13,000 nucleotides of DNA from Takakia lepidozioides (GCA_030704615.1 JAKLZA010000200.1:1-13000); one strand, 5' to 3'; shown: positions 1 to 13,000, numbered from the stretch's first letter. The notes: generated from the letters alone by a model not told the origin. Translations and numbers: made by a program.

Positions 1-264
1 CACAGCCAACACAGCCCGTCACAGTCGTCACAGCCCACACAGCCCACACAGCCGTCACAGCCCACACAGCCAACACAGCCCGTCACAGTCGTCACAGCCC
101 ACACAGCCGTCACAGTCGTCACAGCCCACACAGCCCACACAGCCCGTCACAGTCGTCACAGCAGACATAGCCCACACAGCCAGTCACAGCCCGGCACAGC
201 CACACAGCCAGTCACAGCCCGACACAGCCAAACACAGCCAGTCACCGCTTGACACAGCTGTCAC
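1..264 (+). repeat. Minisatellite array in 5' LTR U3, mostly 9-10 bp units CACAGCC(CA/GT/AA/CGT/AGT)
   Basis: About 28 visible units; terminates in TGACACAGCTGTCA (250-263). Confidence 0.97.
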
Positions 265-660
265 GATAATAGGGAACGAAGAGTAGGACAGGGAACGACT
301 GTGGGGAACAACACCAGTGAAGGGAACATGTTAGTTCACATACGACGGTTAGAGAGGGAAACGGTTAGAACCGCGGATAGGAGGATAAAGGGAAGAACGG
401 GGAATAGGAAGGAGATCATTATTCGGGGAGGACTTCGGAGACAGGCGGGAGCGGAGATCGGAGAGCACGATGAAGGAGAAAAGAGGATTAGTAGAAGCTT
501 GTCATATGCAAAGCTAGAGTGATATTGTAGAGCAGATTAGAGACATAATGGATTCGGCCTGATACCTGATAAATCATAATCTGATACTTATACGATACAA
601 TCACACTGTGTAGAGAGATCTGAGTGAAGCTGTGGATTGAATGGAGGAGTTAAGGAAACC

Positions 661-666
661 AATAAA
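661..666 (+). promoter_or_regulatory. Candidate polyadenylation signal AATAAA in the LTR
   Basis: AATAAA about 210 nt before the LTR end; the position is plausible for R/U5 but the motif is short. Confidence 0.35.
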
Positions 667-880
667 TTGATGAAGCAAACTGATACTTAATTATCAATGG
701 TAAGGTAGCTAAGATGAATGCGGAAAGGAAACAAATAGGAAACACCCCCATGATACACTAGCTGTAGGTCATGACTGATTGTTCTGCGCGGGCTGAGTAC
801 TTAGAGATTTCCAACTCTTCTATCTTGGAGTTTCCGCCTCGGATAGCGAAGGGATGGGTGAGTAAAAGCCGCGCGACATT

Positions 881-898
881 TGGCGACCATACTGGGGA
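881..898 (+). promoter_or_regulatory. Primer binding site, probably tRNA-Arg
   Basis: TGGCGACCATACTGGGGA directly after the LTR end (CA-TT). It resembles the TGGCGAC...CTGGGGA tRNA-Arg PBS type known from Ogre/Tat-group elements. Confidence 0.85.
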
Positions 899-906
899 CC
901 TGGGAC

Positions 907-1466
907 ATGAACAACCAGATGTGACAGGCATCTGGTGGGATCATGGTGGTTGGACCATTAAAGAGTTTGAAGTGAATCAAATTCCCTGTGGAACGAAGGA
1001 AGAAAGATTGTCCAAACAATTCTTTCAAAGGTTCTTGGAATTGCCAGACGGATGTAAAGAAAATATTCTTAAACGAGTGCATGATGCTGATCCAGAATGG
1101 GGTCTGGAGAAAGGAGTGATAAAGATTTATCAGGTAGCCTGTAGAGGAAGAGCACGTTGGTTACCAACATTAGTTTATGTGATAGCGTTGCTATCCATTA
1201 AACGAGTAGAGTTTGAAGGTTGGGAAGAAAGAAAGGTGAATGTTTATACTCATATGCATGAAGAGCTTGTACTGGTAAAGAATTGGATTCCAAAGGATAT
1301 TTTGTGGATCAAACTCACACCAAGAACAGCTTTTCAGACTTGTTTGCCATATGGTTATATGGTAACGGAGACTTCAAGTATAGCCAAGGGTGCATTGAAG
1401 CTTGAAAGAAATCCAGGCATATACGAGAGATATTACAGAAGAGAGTTTTGGTTATTGCCACATTAA
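907..1466 (+). CDS. Upstream ORF of unknown function (~185 aa), or an N-terminal extension of gag
   Basis: Frame open from 771 to 1466. ATG at 907 joins this frame if one C is restored (ATG AAC AAC [C]CA GAT GTG...). The product is globular-looking and aromatic-rich (GIWWDHGGW...WIPKDILW...YYRREFW); family not recognised. Confidence 0.55.
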
Positions 1467-1487
1467 AAGAAATGAAAGACATGGGAC

Positions 1488-3817
1488 ATGAGTGATGAAA
1501 GAGAAGCTAGACGACAAAGATATTCATCAAAAAGAGAAAGCTATCTGAAAGCTAATTATCCATATCTTTGGAGAGAGGAATAGACATAGGGGAATCATCT
1601 GGACCTCTCACACCATCAAGATCAAAAAGTGCATCACCTATACCGGAAGAACTAGAGTTGGATGCCACTCCTTCTGTTTCTTTGCAAGAAAGATTAAGGG
1701 AATTGGTACAGGAAGAAGATCAATCACGAGGTGAAAGATCTGAGGTACATCCTTGGATAAAAGACTTGACAGAAATCTTTGATAAGAGTTGGCATGGAAC
1801 ACCAAAAGCAGGAACTCCAGTTTCTGAAGCAGAAGATGAAGAAGGAGATGAGGATGTGGCAGAGCCAACGGAGAGTTCAGACTCTCCAACACCATTACAG
1901 TTGAGTTACATGAGTGAAGAAGAAACCCAAGGGCAGAACTTGGAGGATGATGAAAACAGAGAGAAGAAATTGGAAGAGGAAGAATATGAAGAAGTAGACC
2001 CAACAGCTGAGGTTGAGACTACAACCAGGACATCCCAACCCGTTGGACCTGGATCAAGTGGAGCACTTGGATCACAGGCCAACGAAGGTGTCGGCTCAGG
2101 GGGATCAGGCGGGCTGCCTGGATCTGGCTCTGGGGGGACAGGGAGTGTGGGAAGTAGTGCACTGAAGCTGAAATACTGGGAATACTGTGAATATCGTGGG
2201 GCCAGAAGCAGGGAGTGCTCAAGGGCCACCACTTGGTGGAAGATCCACCACAAAAACAACAGGTCCAGAAGGACCAGCACCAGCAAGGGTGCCAGCACCT
2301 GTCAGTGGGCAGAAGGTAGGGCCACAGATGGCGTTACAACCAACACGGGCAAAACCACCCTTTCCAATATATTCAGGAAAAGGGGATCCGATGTACACAT
2401 TAGCCAATTTGAGCACATGTGTATAGTGAACAATGAGAATGGCGATGATGCCAAGATGAGACTGTTTCCTTGTTCACTTATCAAGAAAGCAAGTGAATGG
2501 TATGCAAGATTCCCTGATAATCATTTCCTAACCTGGAATGGCTTGAATACAGCATTTCGAAATAGGTTCAGGACAAGTAAAACTGAGGATGAAGTGTATG
2601 GAAGTTTACAACAGCTGAAGCAGAAGAAGCATGAAACTGTTGAAGAGTATATGGAGAAGATGGAATTGATGATGAAAAAGCTGGCTGCAGTACCAGCACC
2701 CGGTTTACAGAAGACTTGGTTTGTGAGTGGACTAAGACCAGAGTTGCAGAAAGAAAGTGGATATGTTACCCCATAATACAGTGGAGGAGGCATTTGAAAC
2801 TGCAAACAGAATTGAGCAATTGGGAATGCTCAGGAGAGAGAAAAAGGAAGATGAGGACTCTGAAGATGAGTCAGATGAAGAAGAAGAGCAAGAACTAAAA
2901 AGAAAGAGTAAGAGAAAGGAAAAGTTGAAGAGGGATAACTATGAGAAAAGATTGGAAGAAATCTTGAAGAAGTATGCCACAGAGGCTGCAACACATTGGA
3001 GGAGGGTGTATGGTGTGCAAAGTGCCAGAATGAAGGCCATACCACTACAGAATGCCACATGAAGGAGAAACACTGTACTATCTGTAAAATGGATAACCAT
3101 TCTACTGAGAATTGTTACTACAACAGAAGGACAGCTGCAAGAGAACCTAGGCAAGTGAGGGTGCATCAGGTGCAGCCCCAGCCAAGAAGAAGCAATGATC
3201 AGGACCACTATGGTAGGTCTGGTGGTTATAACAATGGCATGGAAGGGAGAGGTAATTCAAGAGGGAATTACCAAGGAAATTCCAGAGGCAACTATCAGGG
3301 TAATCCAAGGGGGAATTACCAGCCCGGAAATCAGGATTATAGAAATAATCCAAGACCAGACCAAGGGCGAGGACCCAATGGTGAAGAGCTATGTTACTAT
3401 TGTAATCAGCCAGGACATCGCAAGGCAGCCTGTTCATTCTGGATAAGACACCAGAATGAGATGAGAGCTCCTGTGAATGAGGGCCCAGTGGTGGCAGCTC
3501 ACATGGTTAGGCCATGTGTTGTACCAGAAGTAAGTACAATGATAGTAACAAGAAGTAAAGCCAAACTAATACCTCCAGTAGAAGAGGAAGAAGATGAGAC
3601 TGGAAGTGGCAATGATATGCCTGAAGATGAAGAGACTTGGAAGGATGAGAAGGAACTGCACAAGGAAGTGGCAGATACTATAAGGGAAATGCAAAAGAGT
3701 ACGGATATTCCTGTGGCAGATTCCTCTGATTCGGATGGAGAAAAAGAGGGAGTGAGGAAGAAAGGAAAAAAGAAGATGCAGACATGCAAAGTAATGAAGA
3801 GACTTTGGCTGAAGTAA
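1488..3817 (+). pseudogene. gag: gag (frameshifted): acidic/Gly-Ser N-terminus, retrotransposon capsid domain (~2350-2820), nucleocapsid with three CCHC knuckles
   Basis: PPFPIYSGKGDP/DVHISQFE...LFPCSL...ASEWY...LTWNGLNTAFRNRF...LKQKKHETVEEY...FVSGLRPEL. CX2CX4HX4C at 3014-3055, 3074-3115 and 3392-3433. Stitched from ORFs at 1568, 2187, 2757 and 2996; start uncertain. Confidence 0.9.
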
Positions 3818-4635
3818 TATGTCAGACCAAAGCAGAAATTACCATTGGACAGCTATTAGCTGTGGCACCTTATTGTAGGCACAGGCTGTATCAGGCAATC
3901 AATCGAATTGCCCAAGAGACAGGAAACACAGACCTGAACAGCAAGGTGACCAGTTATAATGTGAAGCCGGAAGGGCGAGAACCAGTCATGGACTTTGATG
4001 ATTCTATGCCAGTAATCCAATTGAGAATTGGAAGCACAGAACTAACTGAAGTACTGATAGATGGTGGTTCTGGAGTAAATATCATGACAGACCAATTAAG
4101 GAAGAAGCTTGGTCTAAGTAACATGAAACCAGCCCCATTTACAGTAACAATGGCAGATCAAAGAAGTGTACAGCCATTGGGATTAATAAGAGGAGTTAAG
4201 ATACAGATACAGAAAATGATCTTTATGATCACAGTAACTGTATTAAAAATGGATGAAGTCATGGAGGCTTACTCCTTATTATTGGGACGTCCGTGGCTGA
4301 AACAGGCAAGGGTATTCCATGACTGGAATTCTCAGTTACTAACTGTGCATAATGGGATGCACGAGATACAAATTACCACAAAGAAATCTAGTAGATTACC
4401 TGCTACAAGAAGACCTCGAGGAGTCAGAGAGTATGACTGGAAGGGAGGACTGGATGAGGAGCAGGAAGCTACCCTATTTGCTGCACACCCAGAATGGGAG
4501 CAGGTTGCAGAGATGCGGCTGGAAAGCCTAAGTTGTTTGAGAGGTATCTGCTGTGGTGTAGTGACAGCAACACCAATTGAAGAGGAAACCAACTGTTACC
4601 CACCACATTTCTATGAAGAAAGGAGGGAGAGATAG
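3784..4635 (+). CDS. pol: pol: retropepsin aspartic protease region
   Basis: VLIDGGSGVNIM (catalytic Asp codon 4060-4062), VTMADQ, and LLLGRPWL. Confidence 0.93.
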   Translation: MQSNEETLAEVICQTKAEITIGQLLAVAPYCRHRLYQAINRIAQETGNTDLNSKVTSYNVKPEGREPVMDFDDSMPVIQLRIGSTELTEVLIDGGSGVNIMTDQLRKKLGLSNMKPAPFTVTMADQRSVQPLGLIRGVKIQIQKMIFMITVTVLKMDEVMEAYSLLLGRPWLKQARVFHDWNSQLLTVHNGMHEIQITTKKSSRLPATRRPRGVREYDWKGGLDEEQEATLFAAHPEWEQVAEMRLESLSCLRGICCGVVTATPIEEETNCYPPHFYEERRER

Positions 4636-4699
4636 AAATCCTAGAAGAACCAGCCACTGTGAGCTTAAGGATGAAGTGGTGACTGGTTGGACAATCACA

Positions 4700-5745
4700 G
4701 CTGATGAGCAGGTGAGAGAAGTAAATGTGGGAACTCAGGAGGAACCAAGAATGGTGAAAGTAGGAGCTGATTTGGAGCCAGAGTTCTTCGAAGAAGCTAA
4801 AAGCTTGTTCATCAAATACAGAGATGTATTTGCTTGGAGCTATGAGGATCTAAAAGGGATACCACCTGAAGTCTGTCAGCATAAAATTGAACTGGAACCA
4901 GGGTCAGTACCAATCAAGCAGGCGAGGTATAGAATGAATCCCAACTACGCACAGAAGGTTGGAGAAGAGATAAGAAGTTGGCTGAGGCTAAGTTTATATA
5001 CCAATAGAGTATACAACTTGGTTGTCACCCATTGTTATAGTTCCCAAGAAGAATGGCAAACTAAGAGTATGTGTGAACTATAAGAAGCTGAATGCTTGTA
5101 CGAAGAAAGATCCTTTCCCTTGCCATTCACAGAAGCAGTATTAGACACTGTGGCAGGCCATGAGATGATTGTACTCATTCATGGATGGCTTCAGTGGTTA
5201 TAATCAAGTGCAAGTGGCAGAAGAGACCAAGGGAAAACAGCTTCATCACAGACTGGGGGGCTTATGCATACAAAGTCATGCCCTTTGGGCTTTGTAATGC
5301 ACACCAGCGACCTTCAGAGAGTGATAAGTGAATCTTTTCAAGAGTATCGGATGATTTCATGCAGGTGTTTTTGGATGATTTCAGTGTGTACAGCTCTAAG
5401 AATGAGCACTTGCATAAATTGGAGTTATGCCTGGCCAGATGCAGGATGAGAGGTCTGGGCTTGAACCCAGAGAAGTGTACTTTCTGTGTGGGGGAATCAG
5501 GGGGCTTCTGGGACACATTGTGTGTAAGAAGGACTCCTTGTGGATCCCAGAAGACAGAGTCCATTAAAGCTCTCTCCCCACCAGTGAATGTTAGAGTTTA
5601 AGGATTCCTTGGGCAAAGCAGTTATTACAGAAGATTTGTCAAAAGGTATGCACAAACAGCAGACCATTGAGCAAGCTTCTGAAGAAAGATGCAGTGTTTG
5701 CATGGACAGCTGAATGTCAACAGGCGTTTGAGGAACTTACACTGT
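4700..5745 (+). pseudogene. pol: pol: reverse transcriptase (multiple frameshifts)
   Basis: YRDVFAWSYEDLKGIPPEVCQHKI; WLSPIVIVPKKNGKLRVCVNYKKLN; KDPFP-PF; MDGFSGYNQV; VMPFGLCNAPA; FLDD at 5368-5379. Boundaries approximate. Confidence 0.95.
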
Positions 5746-5759
5746 CAGTAACAACTACA

Positions 5760-6145
5760 CCTGTGCTGATTAACCCTCACTGGCATGTAGTATTTCATGT
5801 TCACTGCGATGCATCAGGAGAAGCGTTGGAGCAGGTGTTAGCCAGATGATGTTAATATAGATTCACCTGTTGTACTATGCTAGCCGGTTGATGAACAGTG
5901 CTGAGAGGAACTATAGCACAACGGAAGAGAAGCATTGGCAATGATCTATGCAGTGAAGAAATTCAGGCATTACCTATTGGGAAGAAAGTTTATGTTTTAT
6001 GTGGATCACCAGGCTCTGATATATCTGGTGAACAAACCTTTGATAAGTGGAAGGATAGCGAGGTGGTTAATATCTGCATGAGTTTGAGTTCGAGGTTATT
6101 TACAAGCCTGGCCGTTTGCATCTTGTTGCAGATCATTTGTCACGT
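5760..6145 (+). pseudogene. pol: pol: Ty3-type RNase H
   Basis: FHVHCDAS (Asp 5808-5810), YYASRLMNSAERNYS, AMIYAVKKFRHYLLG, VDHQAL, KPGRLHLVADHLSR, read across frames. Confidence 0.93.
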
Positions 6146-6259
6146 CACTAACACACAGGAGAGGCCGCCACAGGAGTGGACGATCAGTTACCTGATGCGA
6201 GTTTATTTGTAATGGAGGTGCAAGGAAGTGCAGATGAATGGTTAGATTGGCAGTGGCCA

Positions 6260-7480
6260 ATCAGATACTACCTTGCTCATGGTCAGTGCCCACCTAGTTA
6301 TGGTAAGGAGCAGAGGAAGAGAATTGCTATCAGAGCTTTACCTTATACTATGGTAGGAAGCAGAATGTATAAGTAGGACACTGACGGAGTACTAAAACGA
6401 TGCTTGTACCACCATGAAGTAATAAAGTCTGGAGGAAGTTCATAAAGGAGTGGCTGGAGGTCATTTTGGAGAAGAAGACCAGTAGAAGAGATATACTCGC
6501 AGGATACTGGTGGCCTACTTTGTTCAAAGATGTACATGAGTATTGTCAGAAAGTGTGATGAATGTCAGAGGCTAGGACCTTTGCAGAGATCTGGAAGAAT
6601 GGCCTTGCATCCTACAATGCCTACGGAACCATTTCAGAAATGGGGACTAGACTTTGTTGGACCAATTAATCCACCATCCAAGAATACACAAAACAGGTAC
6701 ATAATTACAGCCACTGATTATACTACAAAGTGGGTGGAAGCTAAAGCTTTGAGGGACAAAACAGCCAAGTCCACAGCAAGGTTCCTGTACGAGAACATAC
6801 TTACACGATTTGGATGTCCCTTAGAATTTATCAGTGATCAAGGAAGTCACTCATGAATGAGACCATTGAGTTATTGACTAAAGAGTTTATGATTGTGCAT
6901 AGAAAGAGTACAACATATTACCCACAGGGTAATGGACAGGCAGAGGCTACAACAAAATACTATGTACTATCTTGGCTAAGATAGTCAATGCAAACAGAAC
7001 GGATTGGGATACAAAGCTGCTGACAGCTTTATGGTCATACAGGACTTCGTATAAAGTCACCACAAAAGTATACACCATTCCAATTAGTTTATGGTATGGA
7101 AGCCTTACTTCCAGTGGAATTCCTGTTACCTACCATGAGAACGGGTGGGGAAAAAGAATGGAATTGCAAGACTCCATCAAGGTCAGGAAACATGAATTAT
7201 ACCATGTGGAAGAAGTACGTGCTGATGCAGCTGATAATATGACCAGAATTCAGATGAAGCGAAAGGAACAGTTTGATGAAGGCAATTAAAGACTTTTAAG
7301 ACGGGGGATTTGGTTCTATGGTTGCAGAAGAAAGAAAGATTCAAGCTTCTAAGCTTAAATCACCATGGAAAGGACCTTATGTCATCCAAAAGATGTATGA
7401 TAACAACACAGCCATGTTACAAACCATTAACAAAGAAATGCTGGGAAGAGTCAATGCAAATAAGTTGAAGGGTACAGTGG
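6260..7480 (+). pseudogene. pol: pol: integrase (HHCC, DDE core, GPY/F motif), no chromodomain recognised
   Basis: H(6441)..GGHFG..GYWWPTLFKDV..KCDECQ; WGLDFVGP, ISDQGSH, YYPQGNGQAEAT; WSYRTSYK, TPFQLVYG; WKGPYVI (7366-7386); VNANKLK. C-terminal end uncertain. Confidence 0.94.
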
Positions 7481-7616
7481 TATCCATGACAAACCCCTGC
7501 AGCATGATTTGCATGTTGAACCGCAAGAGCAGTCACGGGCTGCACCAGTGTTACGAACAGAGTATGGAACACTTGTCGCTAGGCCCAGTATATATGACCG
7601 GGGTGGGCAAAACAAA

Positions 7617-7980
7617 CGTGACACAGCCTATCACAGCCCATCACGGCATGACACAGCCTATCACAGCCCAGCACGGCGTGACACAGCCTATCACAGCCCA
7701 GCACGGCGTGACACAGCCTATCACAGCCCAGCAGGCGCACACAGCCTATCACAGCCCAGCACGGCGTGACACAGCCTATCACAGCCCAGCAAGGCGCAAC
7801 ACAGCCTATCACAGTCCGTCACGGCGTGACACAGCCTATCACAGCCCGTCACGACGTGACACAGCCTATCACAACCTACCGCAAGCGTGTCACAGCCTAT
7901 CACAGCTTACCACAGTGCAACACAGCCTATCACAGCGTAACACAGTATGACACAGCCTGTCACAGCTCAACACAGCCTAC
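7617..7980 (+). repeat. Internal tandem array, ~12 x 30 bp (GTGACACAGCCTATCACAGCCCAGCACGGC), each unit made of three 10-bp CAC(A/G)GC subunits
   Basis: CACAGCCT(A/G)TCACA starts at 7622, 7652, 7682, 7712, 7740, 7770, 7800, 7830, 7860, 7891, 7921 and 7951; units decay towards the 3' end. Confidence 0.97.
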
Positions 7981-8673
7981 TAAAGTTACACGATCCAAGA
8001 CCATAGAATCAGTGACAAGTGGACACATAAAAACTTCAGGAAAATGGCTGAAGGAAGAAGAAACGGAAATTAATTTAAAAATAGACACGTGGAGGTCAGG
8101 GTGCGACACACAGCAGAGAATGAAGTGCAAGGACAGGTGTCAAAAAGAAAGAGGACAAGAACGGCCGTCAAAAGGGATGAAAGGCGGGCCCATTAATGAA
8201 TACGGAAAAAGGGAAACAGAACGAACGGCAAGTACAGAAAAACTGAATTCATGTCGCATGTGTGATCCTAGTGGACTATCCAACAGGGAAAGTCCACTAA
8301 AGAAGATAAAAGTTAAAATCCAGTCACAGCTGATACAGCCAATAGAAAACCAGAGAAATGATCAAGAAAATGGAGGGAAATTAGCGCAAGAGGCGGCGTC
8401 GTTCTGAGTAACGGGCGTCTCGACAGGACAGGCCATAAATGCTATAACTTGGAAACTATGGAGGAACTAACAGACTATACGCTCGCAATATTACTTACGC
8501 AATGGCAGAGACACGAAACGAAAGAGCAGAGCTTTTCTCTTGAACAATGCTTGCAAGCCCCGCAGGCTTACAAGAGATTACCCATAGCTTTCTGCGGCAA
8601 CCATACGTTTCTGCTTTGTGCACTACAGGCATTCCTGCAGTTGTTACAGCCAAAGCAGTTCTGTGAGTCTAAG
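7981..8673 (+). promoter_or_regulatory. Putative internal promoter/leader of the 3' extra ORF
   Basis: CpG-rich; G-box GACACGTGG (8084-8092); site II-like GGCCCATTA (8187-8195); solo GTCACAGC..ACAGCC (8321-8340); weak TATA-like CATAAATGCTATAA (8434-8447). Function is inferred. Confidence 0.45.
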
Positions 8674-11600
8674 ATGAAGAGAGTGAGAGGAATGGAGGAA
8701 ATCAGGGTGAAGAGCACCACAATTCTGCAGAAACAAACGATGGCTACCCCACAGGCGATAAAGATACTGAAGGAGCTGAGATTGGAAGGATTGCAAAGCA
8801 TGGATTGGACACTACACCATAGACAGTACATGTTACAATTTTTGCAGAACTTTGAGCCAAAGACAGGAACAACAACGGTGAAGGGAGTTGAATTAATGAT
8901 TACTCCCCTATACCTCCAGCAATTGTTTCGATTGCCAGAAGGTCATGTGTATGTGGAGGAACACAGGGAAAGACTGCAAATAGGGGATTTATTCCAAGAA
9001 GGGAGTTTCTTTAAAACTCAGGGTTATGCTTGTACCAAAGCTGTGTACCCAGGGTTAAAAGACATAGGCCAAGTATTGAACGTTCTGATTGCCCTGAAAC
9101 AGAACCAACAATATTTGAGCAGATCCTTCACAGAGGAAATCCTCAAAGGCTTGAAGGGACAAGAGGTACATGGGCGGACATAATGTACAACGCACTGGTA
9201 GAGGAGATGAAAAGATTACAAGGTACTACCGCAAAATCTCCTATCATAGTGTCTGGCCCAATCATTGCTCAAATAATCCTTAGTTCTGGCATACTTAATG
9301 CACAAGAAAGGAAGGAAATGGGAGTGTTTGAGCCAGAAACAACTGCAATGGAAGAGCAAGGCTCTTCACACAGTGAGGGTGGACTAGCAGCACAACCGAG
9401 ACTAAGAGGCAGAGAAGGGGAAAGACTGTAGTGGCGGATCCACTGGCTTCACGGATTCCGCATGATAATGTTCCCAAGCTCATGACCAGGGAGGGCACAG
9501 CAGCACAAAAGAATGTTATTACTGGAAGCAGGACCTTCAGAGAGGGAGGAAGAAGTTACTTCTGCATCACAACCAACACAGCCACTTGAACGACTTGTCA
9601 CAAGGTCACAAGTTATCCATGCAGCTCAACCCGAAATAATAGATTTGGAAAGTGAAGGGATAGATATTCCAACTACAGAACAGATAGTGGCGGAAATAGA
9701 GAAAGGGGACCTTCTCTATGAATATTCTGGTCTGGTCAAGCAGACAGAAATCCCAGAGGTGCAACAGTTGCCCAAAAAATCCTGAGGTACATATAATGCA
9801 CACACCTGTGTGGAGGTACCACAGGCGGAAGGCCATGACACTGTAGCACCGGTCATAAATGAAGTAGTTCAGGAAGAAAATCCGGTGGGACAATGGTCTG
9901 AATGGTTAGTGAGACATCATACTGTTGAAGATCGGAGGAACAGCAGCAACCTCACCATGATGACCCTCAACAGGCAATGCTGATGAATTCCATAGGCAGG
10001 ACACTTAATTTGTTGGGGACTTATGTCAAAACCCATGTTCCAATTACCCAATTGACAGCCTTGAAAGAAGAACTCAGGAAGGAGTTTGAGGCTCGACTTG
10101 CCACTGAGTGTTCAAACAAGGTCGATGAAGAGGTCACTCTCAAGATGAAGCAGGACTTGGCCATACAGAAATGGCTTTGCAATTGGCCAAGCAACAATTG
10201 ATTGAGGCAGGCCTTGCGCAAGACCAGTTGCACGAAGCACATAAGCAACAGCTATACCAAATGCAGGTGCAGCATGAAAGCAAGTTGCAAGAACTGAATG
10301 CACTACATACGGAGTTGCAGACAGTGCATAACAGGATGGAGATACAATGCGCTACATTTACAACTATGCTTGACCAATCAACAAAAGAAATAAACAGTCA
10401 AGCGGAAAAATGTACGAAGGCAGAAGAAGAGAATGTGGAGCACATGAAGCTCATTGTCGATATGAAGAATACAATCTGTCGCAATGAAGATACTTTCAAG
10501 CAATACAGGCAGATGGAAGCTGAGAATGAGAAATACATCGTGGAGTTGCAACAAACCATCGTGGCCAATAGAAATGAAATCTCGGTCAGTAACAAGGCTT
10601 CGAAAGAAGCCAATAATCTACTTGCTGCCTATGCGCAATTGGTTGAGCCACAGGCGAAGCGCATGAAGGCTTTACAACAGCAGTTGGAATTGTATAAGCT
10701 AAGAGAGGAGCAAACTCTCAGGGGAACCACAAGCAGCTTGGTGGATAACAGCCTTATGCAGGTCTGGTTAGCACAAGGGCCAGTAGAGGGCAAAGCCCAC
10801 GGAAGCTCACCCAAAGCGAGATGAATGAGCTTAGACTGCAGGTGCAGAACATTGCCACAACTACTATAGACAATGTCTATAGTAGGATAGCAGAGTTACA
10901 AGAGGATGTAGACGGACTCCAGACTCAAGTGGAAGACCTCACTTCAAACATCGACCAAAGAGTCTATATCCCTCGGGAACAGCTAATGGCTTCTTATTTG
11001 AAAGCCAGAACTCTGGCTTTTCAGTCTTCACAGGAGGTGCAAGAGATGCCAATGGTACAGGAACCACTACCACCACCACCACAATAGGTCAGTGTACCAG
11101 TAACTGAACCTGTGGTTACTACAACCACACCACAGCCACCACAGCCGGAGGTATGGGGCAATGCAGCTTTTAACCCACCTAAAACTCCAGCTGCCAGGGA
11201 GTACAGTAGGGCTATGATTATGCCCTTCAACCAAATTCCATTCATGTTGGATTTGGCTTGGAAAGAATTTAGTCCTCCGCAGTCATTCGCACATTACTAC
11301 CAAATCATGCGTATTTGGCTGCCAGTGGCAACCAGGACTAAAGTTCTTCCAAACAATCGACATATTGAAGATCATCACTTTGCACAATACTGGCACGAGG
11401 CAGGTACCATGTTGAGGGAATTGGTTGCTTTCCAGGTTGTACATGGACTCATTTATACCAAGACCAAGGAGATAGCAAGTATTGTCATGGGGTGCGGGCT
11501 ATACTACGCTGCTTGTTTTCTGATACGTTACCACATTGAGCAACAAAAGATGCAAGCACGCTTTCAAAGTTACTCCAGTGGAGATCATTGGGTATTACCT

Positions 11601-12213
11601 TCGGTGCCACCTCATATGTACCTATATGACCCAAAAGTTATGATACAGAAGGATTCTCAAATTCGTTCATGGTTTCAAGCAGCCTGCAACAATTTGTCAA
11701 CACAGAAATTCGGACTTGATGACATTTTCTATAAGGGACATATCGCATGGAAATACTTGCACGCGGGCACCAGTAATTGGTACCCCACTCATTTGGACAG
11801 ACAAGGAGCTCAGTGTCTACACCAATTTTGCTGTTCAACGGTTGCACCAGGTTGTAAAATGCAAACTTCCAGACATGGTAGGACAGCATTGTATGCCCCA
11901 GATGATTCCACAAAAAGTTCGAAAATTAAAACACCTAAGAGGCGATGACGATTCTGATACAACTGGTTCTTCACAAAATTCTTTTGACATGGGAGAAGAC
12001 TATACAATTCAGATGGAAGCGAAGAAACAAAGGGGATCTCCTCTACCGGAAAGATTACCTCGATATCAGCCTCCAGAAGGCCTCACTTATCCAGGTAGTA
12101 ATCAACCATCTCCATCAACCAGAGACAGACCTCGGGCTCGTACACACAGCCCACCACGAAACTCTCAACGTCAAAGTGATCACTCACAAAGGTTTGCTAC
12201 TCGAAAACAGTAA
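8674..12213 (+). pseudogene. Extra 3' sense ORF ('env-position'), ~1,180 aa when reconstructed: plant-transposon-protein/PMD-like N-domain, acidic linker, long coiled coil, Pro/Thr linker, unknown globular domain, disordered basic tail
   Basis: Near-contiguous + strand ORF pieces starting at 8449, 9030, 9513, 9977, 10171, 10821, 11112 and 11716. N-domain pattern QFLQNF..TTTVKGVELMITPLYLQQLFRLP..(V)TWADIMY..SGPIIAQI. Heptad Q/E/L/K-rich stretch ~10050-11000. The stop at 12211-12213 sits just before the hairpin/PPT. The start could instead be ATG 8458. Confidence 0.75.
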
Positions 12214-12214
12214 A

Positions 12215-12248
12215 CCGTGAGGACACGGCTTTTTGAGGGGGGAAGGGG
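12215..12248 (+). promoter_or_regulatory. CCGTG-AGGA-CACGG hairpin, T-tract and polypurine tract
   Basis: Stem 12215-12219/12224-12228, TTTTT 12230-12234, GAGGGGGGAAGGGG 12235-12248, then TAA and the LTR TG. Confidence 0.92.
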
Positions 12249-12251
12249 TAA

Positions 12252-13000
12252 TGTTAGAGGACTGTAGGGGACTTAGACACTTATACGGGATCTGTAGGGT
12301 ACCCTTAATTTTTGCACAGACTGAGACAAACAGGAACCTTAGGGGTGACAGCAGAGCACTGTAGAAGGGGGTTACACAACCCACACAGCCCACACAGCCG
12401 TCACAGCCGTCACAGCCCACACAGCCCACACAGCCGACACAGCCCACACAGCCCACACAGCCCACACAGCCGTCACAGCCCACACAGCCCACACAGCCGT
12501 CACAGCCAACACAGCCCGTCACAGCCGTCACAGCCCACACAGCCCGTCATAGTCGTCACAGCCCACACAGCCCACACAGCCCGTCACAGTCGTCACAGCA
12601 GACACAGCCCACACAGCCAGTCACAGCCGGCATAGCCACACAGCCAGTCACAGCCCGACACAGCCAAACACAGCCAGTCACCGCTTGACACAGCTGTCAC
12701 GATAATAGGGAACGAAGAGTAGGACAGGGAACGACTGTGGGGAACAACACCAGAGAAGGGAACATGTTAGTTCACATACGACGGTTAGAGAGGGAAACGG
12801 TTAGAACCGCGGATAGGAGGATAAAGGGAAGAACGGGGATTATGATGAGATCATTATTCGGGGAGGACTTGGGAGTCAGGCGGAAGCGGAGATCGGAGAG
12901 CACGATGAAGGAGGATTAGTAGATGCTTGTTAGATGCAAAGCCGTAGGGATATTGTAGAGGAGAATAGAGATACAATGGCTTCGGCCTGATACCTGATAA
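12252..13000 (+). repeat. 3' LTR (right end outside the window)
   Basis: Starts TGTTAGAGG 3 nt after the PPT; matches 5' LTR sequence up to 572. Confidence 0.93.
12375..12700 (+). repeat. Minisatellite array in 3' LTR U3, ~35 units of mostly 9-10 bp CACAGCC-
   Basis: Same unit types as 1-264; ends TGACACAGCTGTCAC. Confidence 0.97.

What the first reader, a model, noticed from the sequence alone, without database searches (positions are those of the whole stretch)
7617..12700. Shared CACAGCC arrays in both LTRs and upstream of a large extra ORF: candidate self-encoded cis-array/trans-factor (VANC-like anti-silencing or transactivation) system
Seen: the core CACAGCC is amplified in two architectures, 9-10 bp units in the LTR U3 and a 30-bp three-part unit at 7617-7980. 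So the motif is conserved while the unit is not. Each array precedes a likely transcription unit (genomic RNA; extra ORF). Known: VANDAL DNA transposons encode VANC proteins that bind short motifs in their own tandem repeats and remove silencing, and plant-mobile-domain proteins (MAIN/MAIL1) related to gypsy ORFs act on chromatin silencing. Inference: the extra-ORF protein, or a host factor, binds these arrays to keep both promoters active. I know of no such system characterised for this element type.
Basis: partly seen in the sequence, partly recalled or inferred. Interest (0 to 1): 0.85.

Follow-up and report, generated by a model that had tools for sequence, protein, structure and literature searches.

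The report
Shared-motif repeat arrays in plant retrotransposon
An old, broken Athila-like plant retrotransposon carries dense same-strand arrays of the 7-base motif CACAGCC in both end repeats and just before its long extra gene; the motif looks constrained, but nothing here shows that the extra gene's protein is what recognises it.

Summary
CACAGCC occurs 73 times, all on the + strand, against 2.2 expected. There are 20 copies in the 5' LTR array (1-239), 28 in the 3' LTR array (12374-12675) and 20 in an internal array (7617-7980). The LTR units are 9-10 bp. The internal 30-bp unit is three diverged 10-bp monomers. The core is much more conserved than the spacers, yet after insertion core and spacer mutated alike, so the motif was constrained while the lineage was active.

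The element is a decayed Ty3/gypsy retrotransposon of about 13.5 kb (LTRs 94% identical, many frameshifts, CpG-depleted). Its extra ORF (about 8120-12210, + strand) has a roughly 200-aa domain distantly related to lycophyte PF20167 proteins. That family is reported as related to Athila ORF-1. A heptad-repeat region follows.

Extra ORFs and tandem-repeat regions after pol are known features of the Ogre/Tat/Athila clade. I found no sequence similarity to VANC or PMD, no DNA-binding domain and no family copies, so co-variation could not be tested. The self-encoded cis/trans idea stays untested speculation. A host factor binding a U3 enhancer-like array is the more economical reading.

The parts
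1..878 (+). 5' LTR, cut by the window start inside its array; ends ...ACA at 876-878
   Evidence: Direct repeats with 12627-13000 at 96-98% per block and 94% overall outside the arrays; sequence read.
1..239 (+). 5' LTR (U3-side) CACAGCC array; 9-10 bp units with higher-order periods of 28 and 64 bp
   Evidence: 20 exact cores; 25 monomers; core variant sites 6 of 175; 10 spacer types.
881..899 (+). Candidate primer-binding site (TGGCGACC...), two bases after the LTR end
   Evidence: Read directly. No tRNA was matched, so this is inference.
1556..7470 (+). Decayed gag-pol: gag (PF03732), CCHC knuckle near 3392-3433, protease near 4018-4305, RT 5332-5598, RNase H 5595-5846 and 5917-6078, integrase zinc domain 6418-6555, integrase core 6446-6853, GPY/F-type C-terminus near 7320-7470; broken by many frameshifts
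   Evidence: Pfam hits; frame map; no chromodomain and no archaeal-type RNase H detected.
7617..7980 (+). Internal array: 12 units of 30 bp (one of 28 bp, one of 31 bp), each made of three 10-bp monomers; the 15-nt block CACAGCCTATCACAG is nearly invariant
   Evidence: Variant sites: sub-unit A 1/120, B 17/120 (1/60 in its first five bases), C 12/90. Fisher A vs B+C p=1.5e-5. All 12 variable columns fall within a 14-column window (P about 3e-5).
8120..12210 (+). Long sense 3' extra ORF, broken into overlapping stop-free pieces. The first ATG in the open frame after the array is at 8120 (the open frame itself reaches back to 7712). It stops at 12211-12213, 21 nt before the PPT
   Evidence: 97% of 7300-12210 is covered by open stretches of at least 70 codons on the + strand, against 23% (max 47%) in shuffles; pieces listed.
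8767..9365 (+). Roughly 200-aa globular domain of the extra ORF, PF20167 ('Retrotransp-rel') / Athila ORF-1-like, crossing one frameshift near 9150-9180
   Evidence: phmmer over 1.84 billion proteins: Selaginella EFJ05700 E=1e-6, Diphasiastrum KAJ7549756 E=1.2e-5; tblastn 2e-15; the Selaginella protein carries PF20167; alignment A1.
10129..11084 (+). Helical, Q/E/K/L-rich region with coiled-coil character
   Evidence: Heptad contrast in 18% of windows of 10749-11084 vs at most 1% in shuffles; weak hits to many coiled-coil Pfam families. In 10129-10821 the evidence is composition only.
11088..12210 (+). C-terminal region of the extra ORF with no detectable relatives; one borderline hydrophobic segment at 11469-11528
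   Evidence: no hits; Kyte-Doolittle 1.7; mostly helical model, pLDDT 43.
12235..12248 (+). Polypurine tract GAGGGGGGAAGGGG
   Evidence: Read directly; lies 3 nt before the TG start of the 3' LTR.
12252..13000 (+). 3' LTR (starts TGTTAG), cut by the window end
12374..12675 (+). 3' LTR (U3-side) CACAGCC array, about 33 units
   Evidence: 28 exact cores; core variant sites 4 of 210; 10 spacer types. It differs from the 5' array by a 9-bp indel, small indels and 7 substitutions.

Best explanation
The window holds one old, dead copy of an undescribed plant Ty3/gypsy retrotransposon of the non-chromovirus Ogre/Tat/Athila (OTA) kind, most like Athila. It has the usual accessories of that clade: tandem repeats in the LTR, a tandem-repeat block after pol, and a long sense 3' extra ORF. 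That ORF encodes a PF20167 / Athila ORF-1-like domain followed by a coiled coil. Both kinds of array are built from a 9-10 bp monomer whose core CACAGCC was kept constant while spacers and higher-order units diverged. I read the arrays as multi-site platforms for a sequence-specific binder, with sites about one helical turn apart. The most economical binder is a host factor that uses the U3 array as an enhancer for genomic-RNA transcription. The internal array would then be a second copy of the same platform at the pol/extra-ORF junction, seeded and resized by template slippage or strand transfer during reverse transcription. Shown: the anatomy, the statistics, the constraint on the core, the coding nature and distant family of the extra ORF. 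Inferred: that anything binds, whether binding is to DNA or RNA, that the binder is a host protein, and how the arrays arose.
For: Motif enrichment and strict strandedness. Array architecture. Core far less variable than spacers: LTR cores 10/385 variant sites, while 35/55 units carry non-majority spacers of 10 types. In the internal array sub-unit A has 1/120 variant sites against 29/210 in B+C, p=1.5e-5. The core is not intrinsically hypomutable: after insertion the two LTR arrays differ at 4/166 core and 3/62 spacer sites. Gypsy domain order with no chromodomain and no archaeal RNase H. Extra-ORF coding signal and distant homology to PF20167 proteins. Literature: PF20167 is related to Athila ORF-1 and sits in a sunflower Athila 3' aORF (PMC11728184); OTA elements typically have extra ORFs and expanded regions with tandem arrays (PMC6317226); arrays after pol are common in the Tat lineage and are proposed to arise by abnormal strand transfer (PMC7004042); about half of active Retand elements have them, with family-specific repeats of unknown function (PMC11963269).
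Against: This is a single decayed copy with no relatives, so constraint is inferred from within-array variation, where units share ancestry and are not independent. Part of the variable segment carries CpGs in a CpG-depleted element, which inflates its variability. No known factor for CACAGCC was identified. The U3/R/U5 borders, TATA box and transcription start are not mapped. The PF20167 link is transitive, at 27-32% identity, and the window piece itself does not hit the Pfam model. Lineage was not placed by RT phylogeny.
Confidence: 0.5

Rival explanations
1. One reading: the extra-ORF protein itself binds the CACAGCC arrays and keeps the LTR promoter and an internal promoter active, by transactivation or VANC-like anti-silencing.
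For: As in VANDAL21, a short motif is arrayed at high density in one orientation in non-coding-looking parts of the element, and tandem-repeat turnover gives different units around one core (PMC5735166). The core is constrained in both architectures. The extra ORF pairs a globular domain with a coiled coil, and both VANC and the 'Athila domain' protein are modelled as coiled-coil oligomers (PMC13547354). A regulatory role for OTA extra-ORF proteins has been proposed for Retand TRP28 (PMC11963269). The N-terminus after ATG 8120 is basic.
Against: No sequence similarity to VANC, PMD (PF10536), Transposase_28 or any DNA-binding family. The domain profile finds nothing in PDB sequences, which should include VANC21 entry 9LNK. 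The models are too poor for a fold test. No co-variation data exist. Sense 3' extra ORFs studied so far are expressed by splicing, not from internal promoters (PMC7264820).
Confidence: 0.1
2. Neutral by-product: the arrays are slippage or strand-transfer products of reverse transcription with no function. The constant core reflects the microhomology at which the polymerase re-aligns, or recent homogenisation.
For: Such 'hypervariable' arrays are common in this clade and are attributed to abnormal strand transfers (PMC7004042). The two LTR arrays already differ by unit-sized indels. Array edges are more degenerate than the centre. The U3 array RNA is essentially unstructured.
Against: Homogenisation acts on whole units. 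It does not explain why sub-unit A stays perfect in edge units whose B and C sub-units have diverged by about 30-40%. It also does not explain why two arrays with unrelated spacers and flanks keep the same 7-mer.
Confidence: 0.2
3. RNA-level element: both arrays are in the genomic RNA, where they flank the extra ORF. They could act as single-stranded C/A-rich binding platforms for export, packaging or splice-site choice, or as direct repeats that allow the extra ORF to be lost by template switching. The direct repeats flanking src in Rous sarcoma virus are a comparable case (from my own knowledge).
For: All 73 cores are on the transcribed strand. The U3 array folds at only -25.7 kcal/mol over 302 nt. 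The arrays bracket the extra ORF as direct repeats.
Against: Strandedness is automatic for tandem arrays. There is no Rfam match. Spacing near one helical turn suits double-stranded DNA recognition at least as well. There is no transcript evidence.
Confidence: 0.1
4. The internal array is coding: a 10-residue peptide repeat extending the integrase C-terminus or forming the N-terminal part of the extra ORF.
For: The unit is exactly 10 codons. The pol frame runs from the GPY/F module into the array without a stop, and the same peptide register continues past the 28-bp unit in the next frame, which then stays open 141 codons beyond the array to 8404.
Against: Two of the three registers are stop-free by composition. 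Curators of REXdb discard ORFs inside tandem repeats for this reason (PMC6317226). Differences among units are mostly non-synonymous in that register. The LTR arrays, which are non-coding, keep the same core. The conserved block is a nucleotide block of 15 nt that cuts across codons.
Confidence: 0.1

Closest known systems
Athila-clade (OTA superclade) Ty3/gypsy retrotransposons with a sense 3' extra ORF (Athila ORF-1 / PF20167 class, 'env-like')
   Same: Gypsy domain order with no chromodomain. Large size (about 13.5 kb). A long sense ORF between pol and the PPT, containing a domain distantly related to PF20167 proteins, followed by a coiled coil. Tandem-repeat regions are present.
   Different: The extra ORF is roughly twice as long (about 1,360 codons) as the 487-aa sunflower Athila aORF. 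Its nearest relatives are lycophyte host-like genes at 27-32% identity. The window piece does not itself reach the Pfam model. A transmembrane segment is doubtful. RT phylogeny was not done.
VANC / VANDAL21 sequence-specific anti-silencing system (PMC5735166, PMC10398659)
   Same: A short motif at high density and in one orientation inside tandem repeats in non-coding-looking regions of the element. The repeat units turn over while the motif persists. The element encodes an accessory protein with a coiled coil.
   Different: The host element here is an LTR retrotransposon, not a Mutator-like DNA transposon. There is no detectable sequence relation to VANC or MAIN/PMD. Binding, demethylation and co-evolution are all untested.
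Retand POL-3'LTR region (PMC11963269)
   Same: A long region between pol and the 3' LTR with arrays of short, family-specific tandem repeats plus an accessory ORF proposed to be regulatory.
   Different: Retand ORFs are antisense and carry Transposase_28. Retand is reported only from flowering plants. No motif sharing with the LTR is described there.
Hypervariable tandem-repeat region of Ogre/Tat elements (PMC7004042, citing Macas et al. 2009)
   Same: A tandem array immediately downstream of the gag-pol coding region, of the kind ascribed to abnormal strand transfer.
   Different: Those arrays lie in a 3' untranslated region next to the LTR. Here the array precedes a 4-kb ORF and shares its core with the U3 array.
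U3 enhancer repeats bound by host factors (human LTR12 repeats, PMC11853044; tobacco Tnt1 and Tto1 U3 repeats, from my own knowledge)
   Same: A tandemly repeated short element in the 5' part of the LTR, upstream of the likely transcription start.
   Different: No binding factor is known for CACAGCC. Those systems have no second array with the same core inside the element.

Membership tests
Ty3/gypsy LTR retrotransposon, non-chromovirus OTA (Athila-like) | Two LTRs with PBS after the 5' LTR and PPT before the 3' LTR | tested here: met
   Both LTRs are cut by the window, so target-site duplication and full LTR length (about 1.06 kb, inferred) could not be checked.
Ty3/gypsy LTR retrotransposon, non-chromovirus OTA (Athila-like) | Domain order gag-PR-RT-RH-IN | tested here: met
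   Pfam hits in that order.
Ty3/gypsy LTR retrotransposon, non-chromovirus OTA (Athila-like) | No chromodomain after integrase | tested here: met
   No chromo-type hit in 6933-7616. The copy is decayed, so absence is weak evidence.
Ty3/gypsy LTR retrotransposon, non-chromovirus OTA (Athila-like) | Extra ORF with an Athila ORF-1 / PF20167-type domain | tested here: inconclusive
   Transitive only. The window piece matches Selaginella P0001 (E=1e-6). P0001 matches PF20167 (E=3.5e-8, below the curated cut-off, but listed as PF20167 in the precomputed tables). The window piece alone gives no Pfam hit.
Ty3/gypsy LTR retrotransposon, non-chromovirus OTA (Athila-like) | No archaeal-type RNase H (separates Athila from Tat; PMC6317226) | tested here: inconclusive
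   Only RT-linked RNase H found, but pol is fragmented.
Ty3/gypsy LTR retrotransposon, non-chromovirus OTA (Athila-like) | Placement in RT/RH/IN phylogeny | not tested
VANC-type anti-silencing system | Carried by a VANDAL (Mutator-like) DNA transposon | tested here: not met
   The element is an LTR retrotransposon.
VANC-type anti-silencing system | Accessory protein homologous to VANC (MAIN/PMD-like fold; PDB 9LNK per PMC13547354) | tested here: inconclusive
   Sequence tests were negative (Pfam; PDB). The fold test was not meaningful (pLDDT 52 and 43; Foldseek best E 2.7).
VANC-type anti-silencing system | Short motif arrayed densely in one orientation in the element's non-coding regions | tested here: met
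   The non-coding status of the internal array is uncertain.
VANC-type anti-silencing system | Protein binds the motif; expression in trans removes methylation from family copies | not testable with these tools
   Needs EMSA, DAP-seq and methylome experiments.
VANC-type anti-silencing system | Motif and protein co-vary among related families | not testable with these tools
   No related element was found in any collection.
Plant mobile domain (PF10536) proteins | Match to the PMD profile | tested here: not met
   No PMD hit for any piece, even at E up to 5.
Env-like 3' ORF of plant retroelements | Transmembrane segment(s) | tested here: inconclusive
   One borderline hydrophobic 19-mer at 11469-11528 (KD 1.7). 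Another at 9237-9300 lies inside the globular domain.
Env-like 3' ORF of plant retroelements | Expression from a spliced subgenomic RNA | not testable with these tools
   Needs transcript data.
Tat-lineage hypervariable tandem-repeat region | Tandem array directly downstream of the pol coding region | tested here: met
   The array begins about 150 nt after the integrase GPY/F module.

The most novel reading that the evidence does not exclude
The Athila-type extra-ORF protein is a sequence-specific, coiled-coil-oligomerising binder of the CACAGCC arrays. It would act on the element's own U3, and on an internal control region, to activate transcription or to counter silencing. That would make it an LTR-retrotransposon counterpart of VANC that arose independently, and it would give the family-specific tandem repeats of OTA elements a function.
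Probability: 0.08. Interest if true: 0.85.

Novelty: new member of a known kind. Interest (0 to 1): 0.38.

Why it matters
Tandem-repeat blocks and extra ORFs are hallmarks of the largest plant retrotransposons, and a 2025 survey still states that the origin and function of the repeats are unknown. Here one copy carries the same short core in two different array architectures, with internal evidence that the core was held constant. That turns a vague question into a concrete one: what binds CACAGCC, on DNA or RNA, and is the binder a host protein or the element's own? If the binder were self-encoded, it would be the first cis-array/trans-factor system in an LTR retrotransposon. If it is a host factor, it would be another ordinary example of enhancer repeats in U3.

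Tried and rejected
1. Family copies. Searches with the C-terminal extra-ORF piece, with gag and with the Selaginella bridge protein found nothing new.
2. Exhaustive search with the 8362-9180 piece gave only 6 weak hits.
3. Motif-pattern scans of metagenome and viral contigs gave 200+ loci. None was similar to the element outside the arrays. The two motif-rich contigs are unrelated simple repeats.
The integrase search of viral contigs was empty.
5. The genomic contexts of the lycophyte and metagenome relatives show no gag-pol and no arrays.
6. Common descent of the internal and LTR arrays: rejected as unsupported, because the flanks are unrelated and the shared 13-mer is within the null range.
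7. G-quadruplex reading of the U3 array: rejected, with no canonical G3N1-7 motif on either strand.
8. PMD and VANC membership by sequence: negative.
9. Fold-based test: both AlphaFold models were too poor and Foldseek gave nothing.
10. Rfam and tRNA scans were empty.
11. A literature search for the bare heptamer was useless, returning only primer sequences.
12. The extra ORF was searched only as separate stop-free pieces.
13. Three loci from human-gut metagenome assemblies (L007, L010, L065) might be human DNA. They were left out of all comparisons and were not examined.

Full report
**What is there.** The 13-kb window is almost entirely one LTR retrotransposon on the + strand. A 3' LTR starts at 12252 (TGTTAG), three bases after a polypurine tract (12235-12248), and runs off the window end. 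Its counterpart occupies 1-878 and is cut by the window start. Outside the arrays the two LTRs are 94% identical: 19 substitutions and 2 gap events in 325 aligned bases. A candidate primer-binding site begins two bases after the 5' LTR (881-899).

Pfam finds the following, in order, all in broken frames (frame map):
- gag (PF03732)
- a CCHC knuckle
- an aspartic protease
- RT
- RT-linked RNase H
- the integrase zinc and core domains

The integrase GPY/F-type C-terminus is readable at about 7320-7470. No chromodomain and no archaeal-type RNase H were detected. CpG observed/expected is 0.24 in gag-pol and 0.44 in the 3' region, with an excess of TpG/CpA. This is therefore an old, methylated, dead copy of a Ty3/gypsy non-chromovirus element, about 13.5 kb long by inference.

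**The observation.** CACAGCC occurs 73 times, always on the + strand, against 2.2 expected. There are 20 copies in 1-239, 20 in 7622-7977, 28 in 12384-12675 and five scattered. TRF reports period 9 in the LTR arrays (with higher-order periods of 28 and 64 bp) and period 30 in the internal array, with 11.9 copies at 86% match.

Cutting at the cores shows LTR units of 9 or 10 bp with ten different spacers. The internal 30-mer is three 10-mers: CACAGCCTAT, CACAGCCCAG and CACGGCGTGA. The third reverts to CACAGT-type forms at the 3' edge.

**Is the shared motif more than shared ancestry?** The sequences flanking the internal array have no similarity to those flanking the LTR arrays. The longest string shared between array types is 13 nt, which is unexceptional when only the cores are held fixed. 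So nothing beyond the 7-mer ties the arrays together.

Within the arrays the core is strongly favoured.
- In the LTR arrays, 10 of 385 core sites vary, while 35 of 55 units carry a non-majority spacer.
- In the internal array, sub-unit A has 1 variant site in 120, spacer included. The first five bases of B have 1 in 60, the last five of B have 16 in 60, and C has 12 in 90. Fisher A vs B+C gives p=1.5e-5.
- All 12 variable columns lie in one 14-column stretch (P about 3e-5).
- Edge units whose B and C parts have diverged by a third still have a perfect A part.

As a control, the differences between the two LTR arrays arose after insertion. They hit core and spacer alike: 4/166 and 3/62 sites. 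The core is therefore not simply less mutable. I conclude that a roughly 7-15 nt element was held constant in the active lineage. Three caveats apply. The units are not independent observations. The variable segment contains the array's CpGs. And this is a single copy.

**The extra ORF.** From 7300 to 12210 the + strand is 97% covered by stop-free stretches of at least 70 codons, against 23% (maximum 47%) in shuffles. The pieces overlap as expected for one ORF broken by frameshifts, with a single uncovered gap at 9783-9928. The last piece stops at 12211-12213, just before the PPT.

The first ATG after the array in the open frame is at 8120. The frame itself is open back into the array.

No piece has a Pfam hit even at E up to 5, and none has a PDB sequence match. 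An exhaustive phmmer of the 8362-9180 piece against 1.84 billion proteins found Selaginella EFJ05700 (E=1e-6) and Diphasiastrum KAJ7549756 (E=1.2e-5). tblastn extends the match over 8767-9365, across one frameshift, and the alignment is convincing.

The Selaginella protein carries PF20167 followed by coiled coil. PF20167 is reported as related to Athila ORF-1 (PF03078) and occurs in the sense 3' aORF of a sunflower Athila (PMC11728184). Athila ORF-1 is one of the three domains typical of OTA extra ORFs (PMC6317226).

Downstream, 10749-11084 shows clear heptad periodicity, and 10129-10821 is Q/E/K/L-rich. The C-terminal 370 codons have no relatives. The Diphasiastrum and Selaginella genes sit among host genes, with no gag-pol or arrays nearby. 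The extra ORF is thus best filed with the known Athila-type accessory ORFs. The link is distant and transitive.

**Testing the VANC/PMD analogy.** The motif architecture does resemble VANDAL21: a short motif, high density, one orientation, inside fast-evolving tandem repeats (PMC5735166). A 2026 atlas reports that VANC21 has a solved structure (9LNK) and resembles MAIN. It also reports that both VANC and the 'Athila domain' protein are modelled as coiled-coil oligomers (PMC13547354).

Here, however, there is no PMD or other relevant Pfam match. The domain profile finds nothing among PDB sequences. The two AlphaFold models were too poor (mean pLDDT 52 and 43) for the Foldseek result (best E 2.7) to mean anything. 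Membership is therefore not shown by sequence and untested by fold. The functional analogy is neither supported nor excluded.

**Is the internal array a promoter element?** Its position is compatible with that: 140 nt upstream of ATG 8120. Three points argue against relying on it.
- Sense 3' extra ORFs that have been studied are expressed by splicing (PMC7264820).
- The pol frame enters the array without a stop. Two of the three registers are stop-free, and the same peptide register continues across the 28-bp unit into a frame that stays open to 8404. A coding or read-through status therefore cannot be excluded.
- REXdb curators warn that ORFs in tandem repeats usually reflect lack of stop codons (PMC6317226).

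Other readings were also checked. There are no canonical G-quadruplex motifs and no Rfam family. The U3 array RNA is nearly unstructured, while the internal array folds slightly better than shuffles (z=-2.0) because sub-unit C is a near-palindrome.

**Comparison with what is known.** Extra ORFs and expanded regions with tandem arrays are typical of OTA elements (PMC6317226). Arrays just after pol are common in the Tat lineage and are ascribed to abnormal strand transfer (PMC7004042). In Retand about half of active elements have them, the repeats are family-specific, and their function is unknown (PMC11963269). That paper also proposes a regulatory role for its accessory proteins.

What I did not find described in the papers read is one core motif shared between the U3 array and the array preceding the extra ORF, with evidence of constraint. 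That is a modest new feature of an otherwise standard architecture.

**Limits.** Three loci from human-gut metagenome assemblies (L007, L010, L065) might be human and were left out of all comparisons. The host species is unknown. The nearest protein relatives are lycophytes at 27-32% identity.

**Verdict.** The element is a new member of a known kind. The arrays are probably functional binding platforms. The binder is unknown, and a host factor is the more economical candidate than the element's own protein. Interest is moderate.

Noticed in passing
window 768-1463 (+): A 232-codon stop-free frame upstream of gag, intact in an otherwise frameshifted element. It spans the LTR end and the candidate PBS, has no in-frame ATG after the PBS, and has no Pfam hit. 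It could be a 5' extra ORF or a displaced gag N-terminus.
   Followed up: partly
window 881-899 (+): The candidate primer-binding site TGGCGACCATACTGGGGAC lies two bases after the LTR end (...ACA, 876-878). The cognate tRNA was not identified.
   Followed up: no
window 240-572 and 12676-13000 vs 900-7600: CpG observed/expected is about 1.06 in the non-array LTR part but 0.24 in gag-pol, so CpG decay is very uneven along the element.
   Followed up: no
window 3250-3321 (+): A 24-bp unit repeated three times (72% match) inside the gag/nucleocapsid reading frame, i.e. an 8-residue peptide repeat.
   Followed up: no
window 7617-7980, third sub-unit of each 30-mer: Sub-unit C (CACGGCGTG) is a near-palindrome carrying the array's CpGs. 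It gives the internal array RNA modest extra folding (z=-2.0), unlike the unstructured U3 array.
   Followed up: partly
window 8120-8270 (+): After ATG 8120 the extra ORF begins with a basic stretch containing CxxxC and, about 40 residues later, CxxC. This could be a zinc-binding or nuclear-localisation region. There is no Pfam hit.
   Followed up: no
window 11063-11146 (+): An (ACC)n run and a 9-bp repeat that contains CACAGCC twice encode a Thr/Pro-rich linker between the coiled coil and the C-terminal region.
   Followed up: no
window 1-239 vs 12374-12675: The two LTR arrays of the same copy differ by a 9-bp (one-unit) indel and single-base indels, so array length changed at or after insertion.
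   Followed up: partly
L212:5327-15433: The Selaginella gene model for the PF20167 protein spans 10 kb with several unrelated genes nested inside it. It is probably an annotation artefact.
   Followed up: no
L044:1-1170 and L057:555-2073: These metagenome contigs hold dense arrays that contain CACAGCC but are different simple repeats (CA-rich 10-13-mers; GCC/ACA-type 9-mers). They are unrelated to the element.
   Followed up: yes
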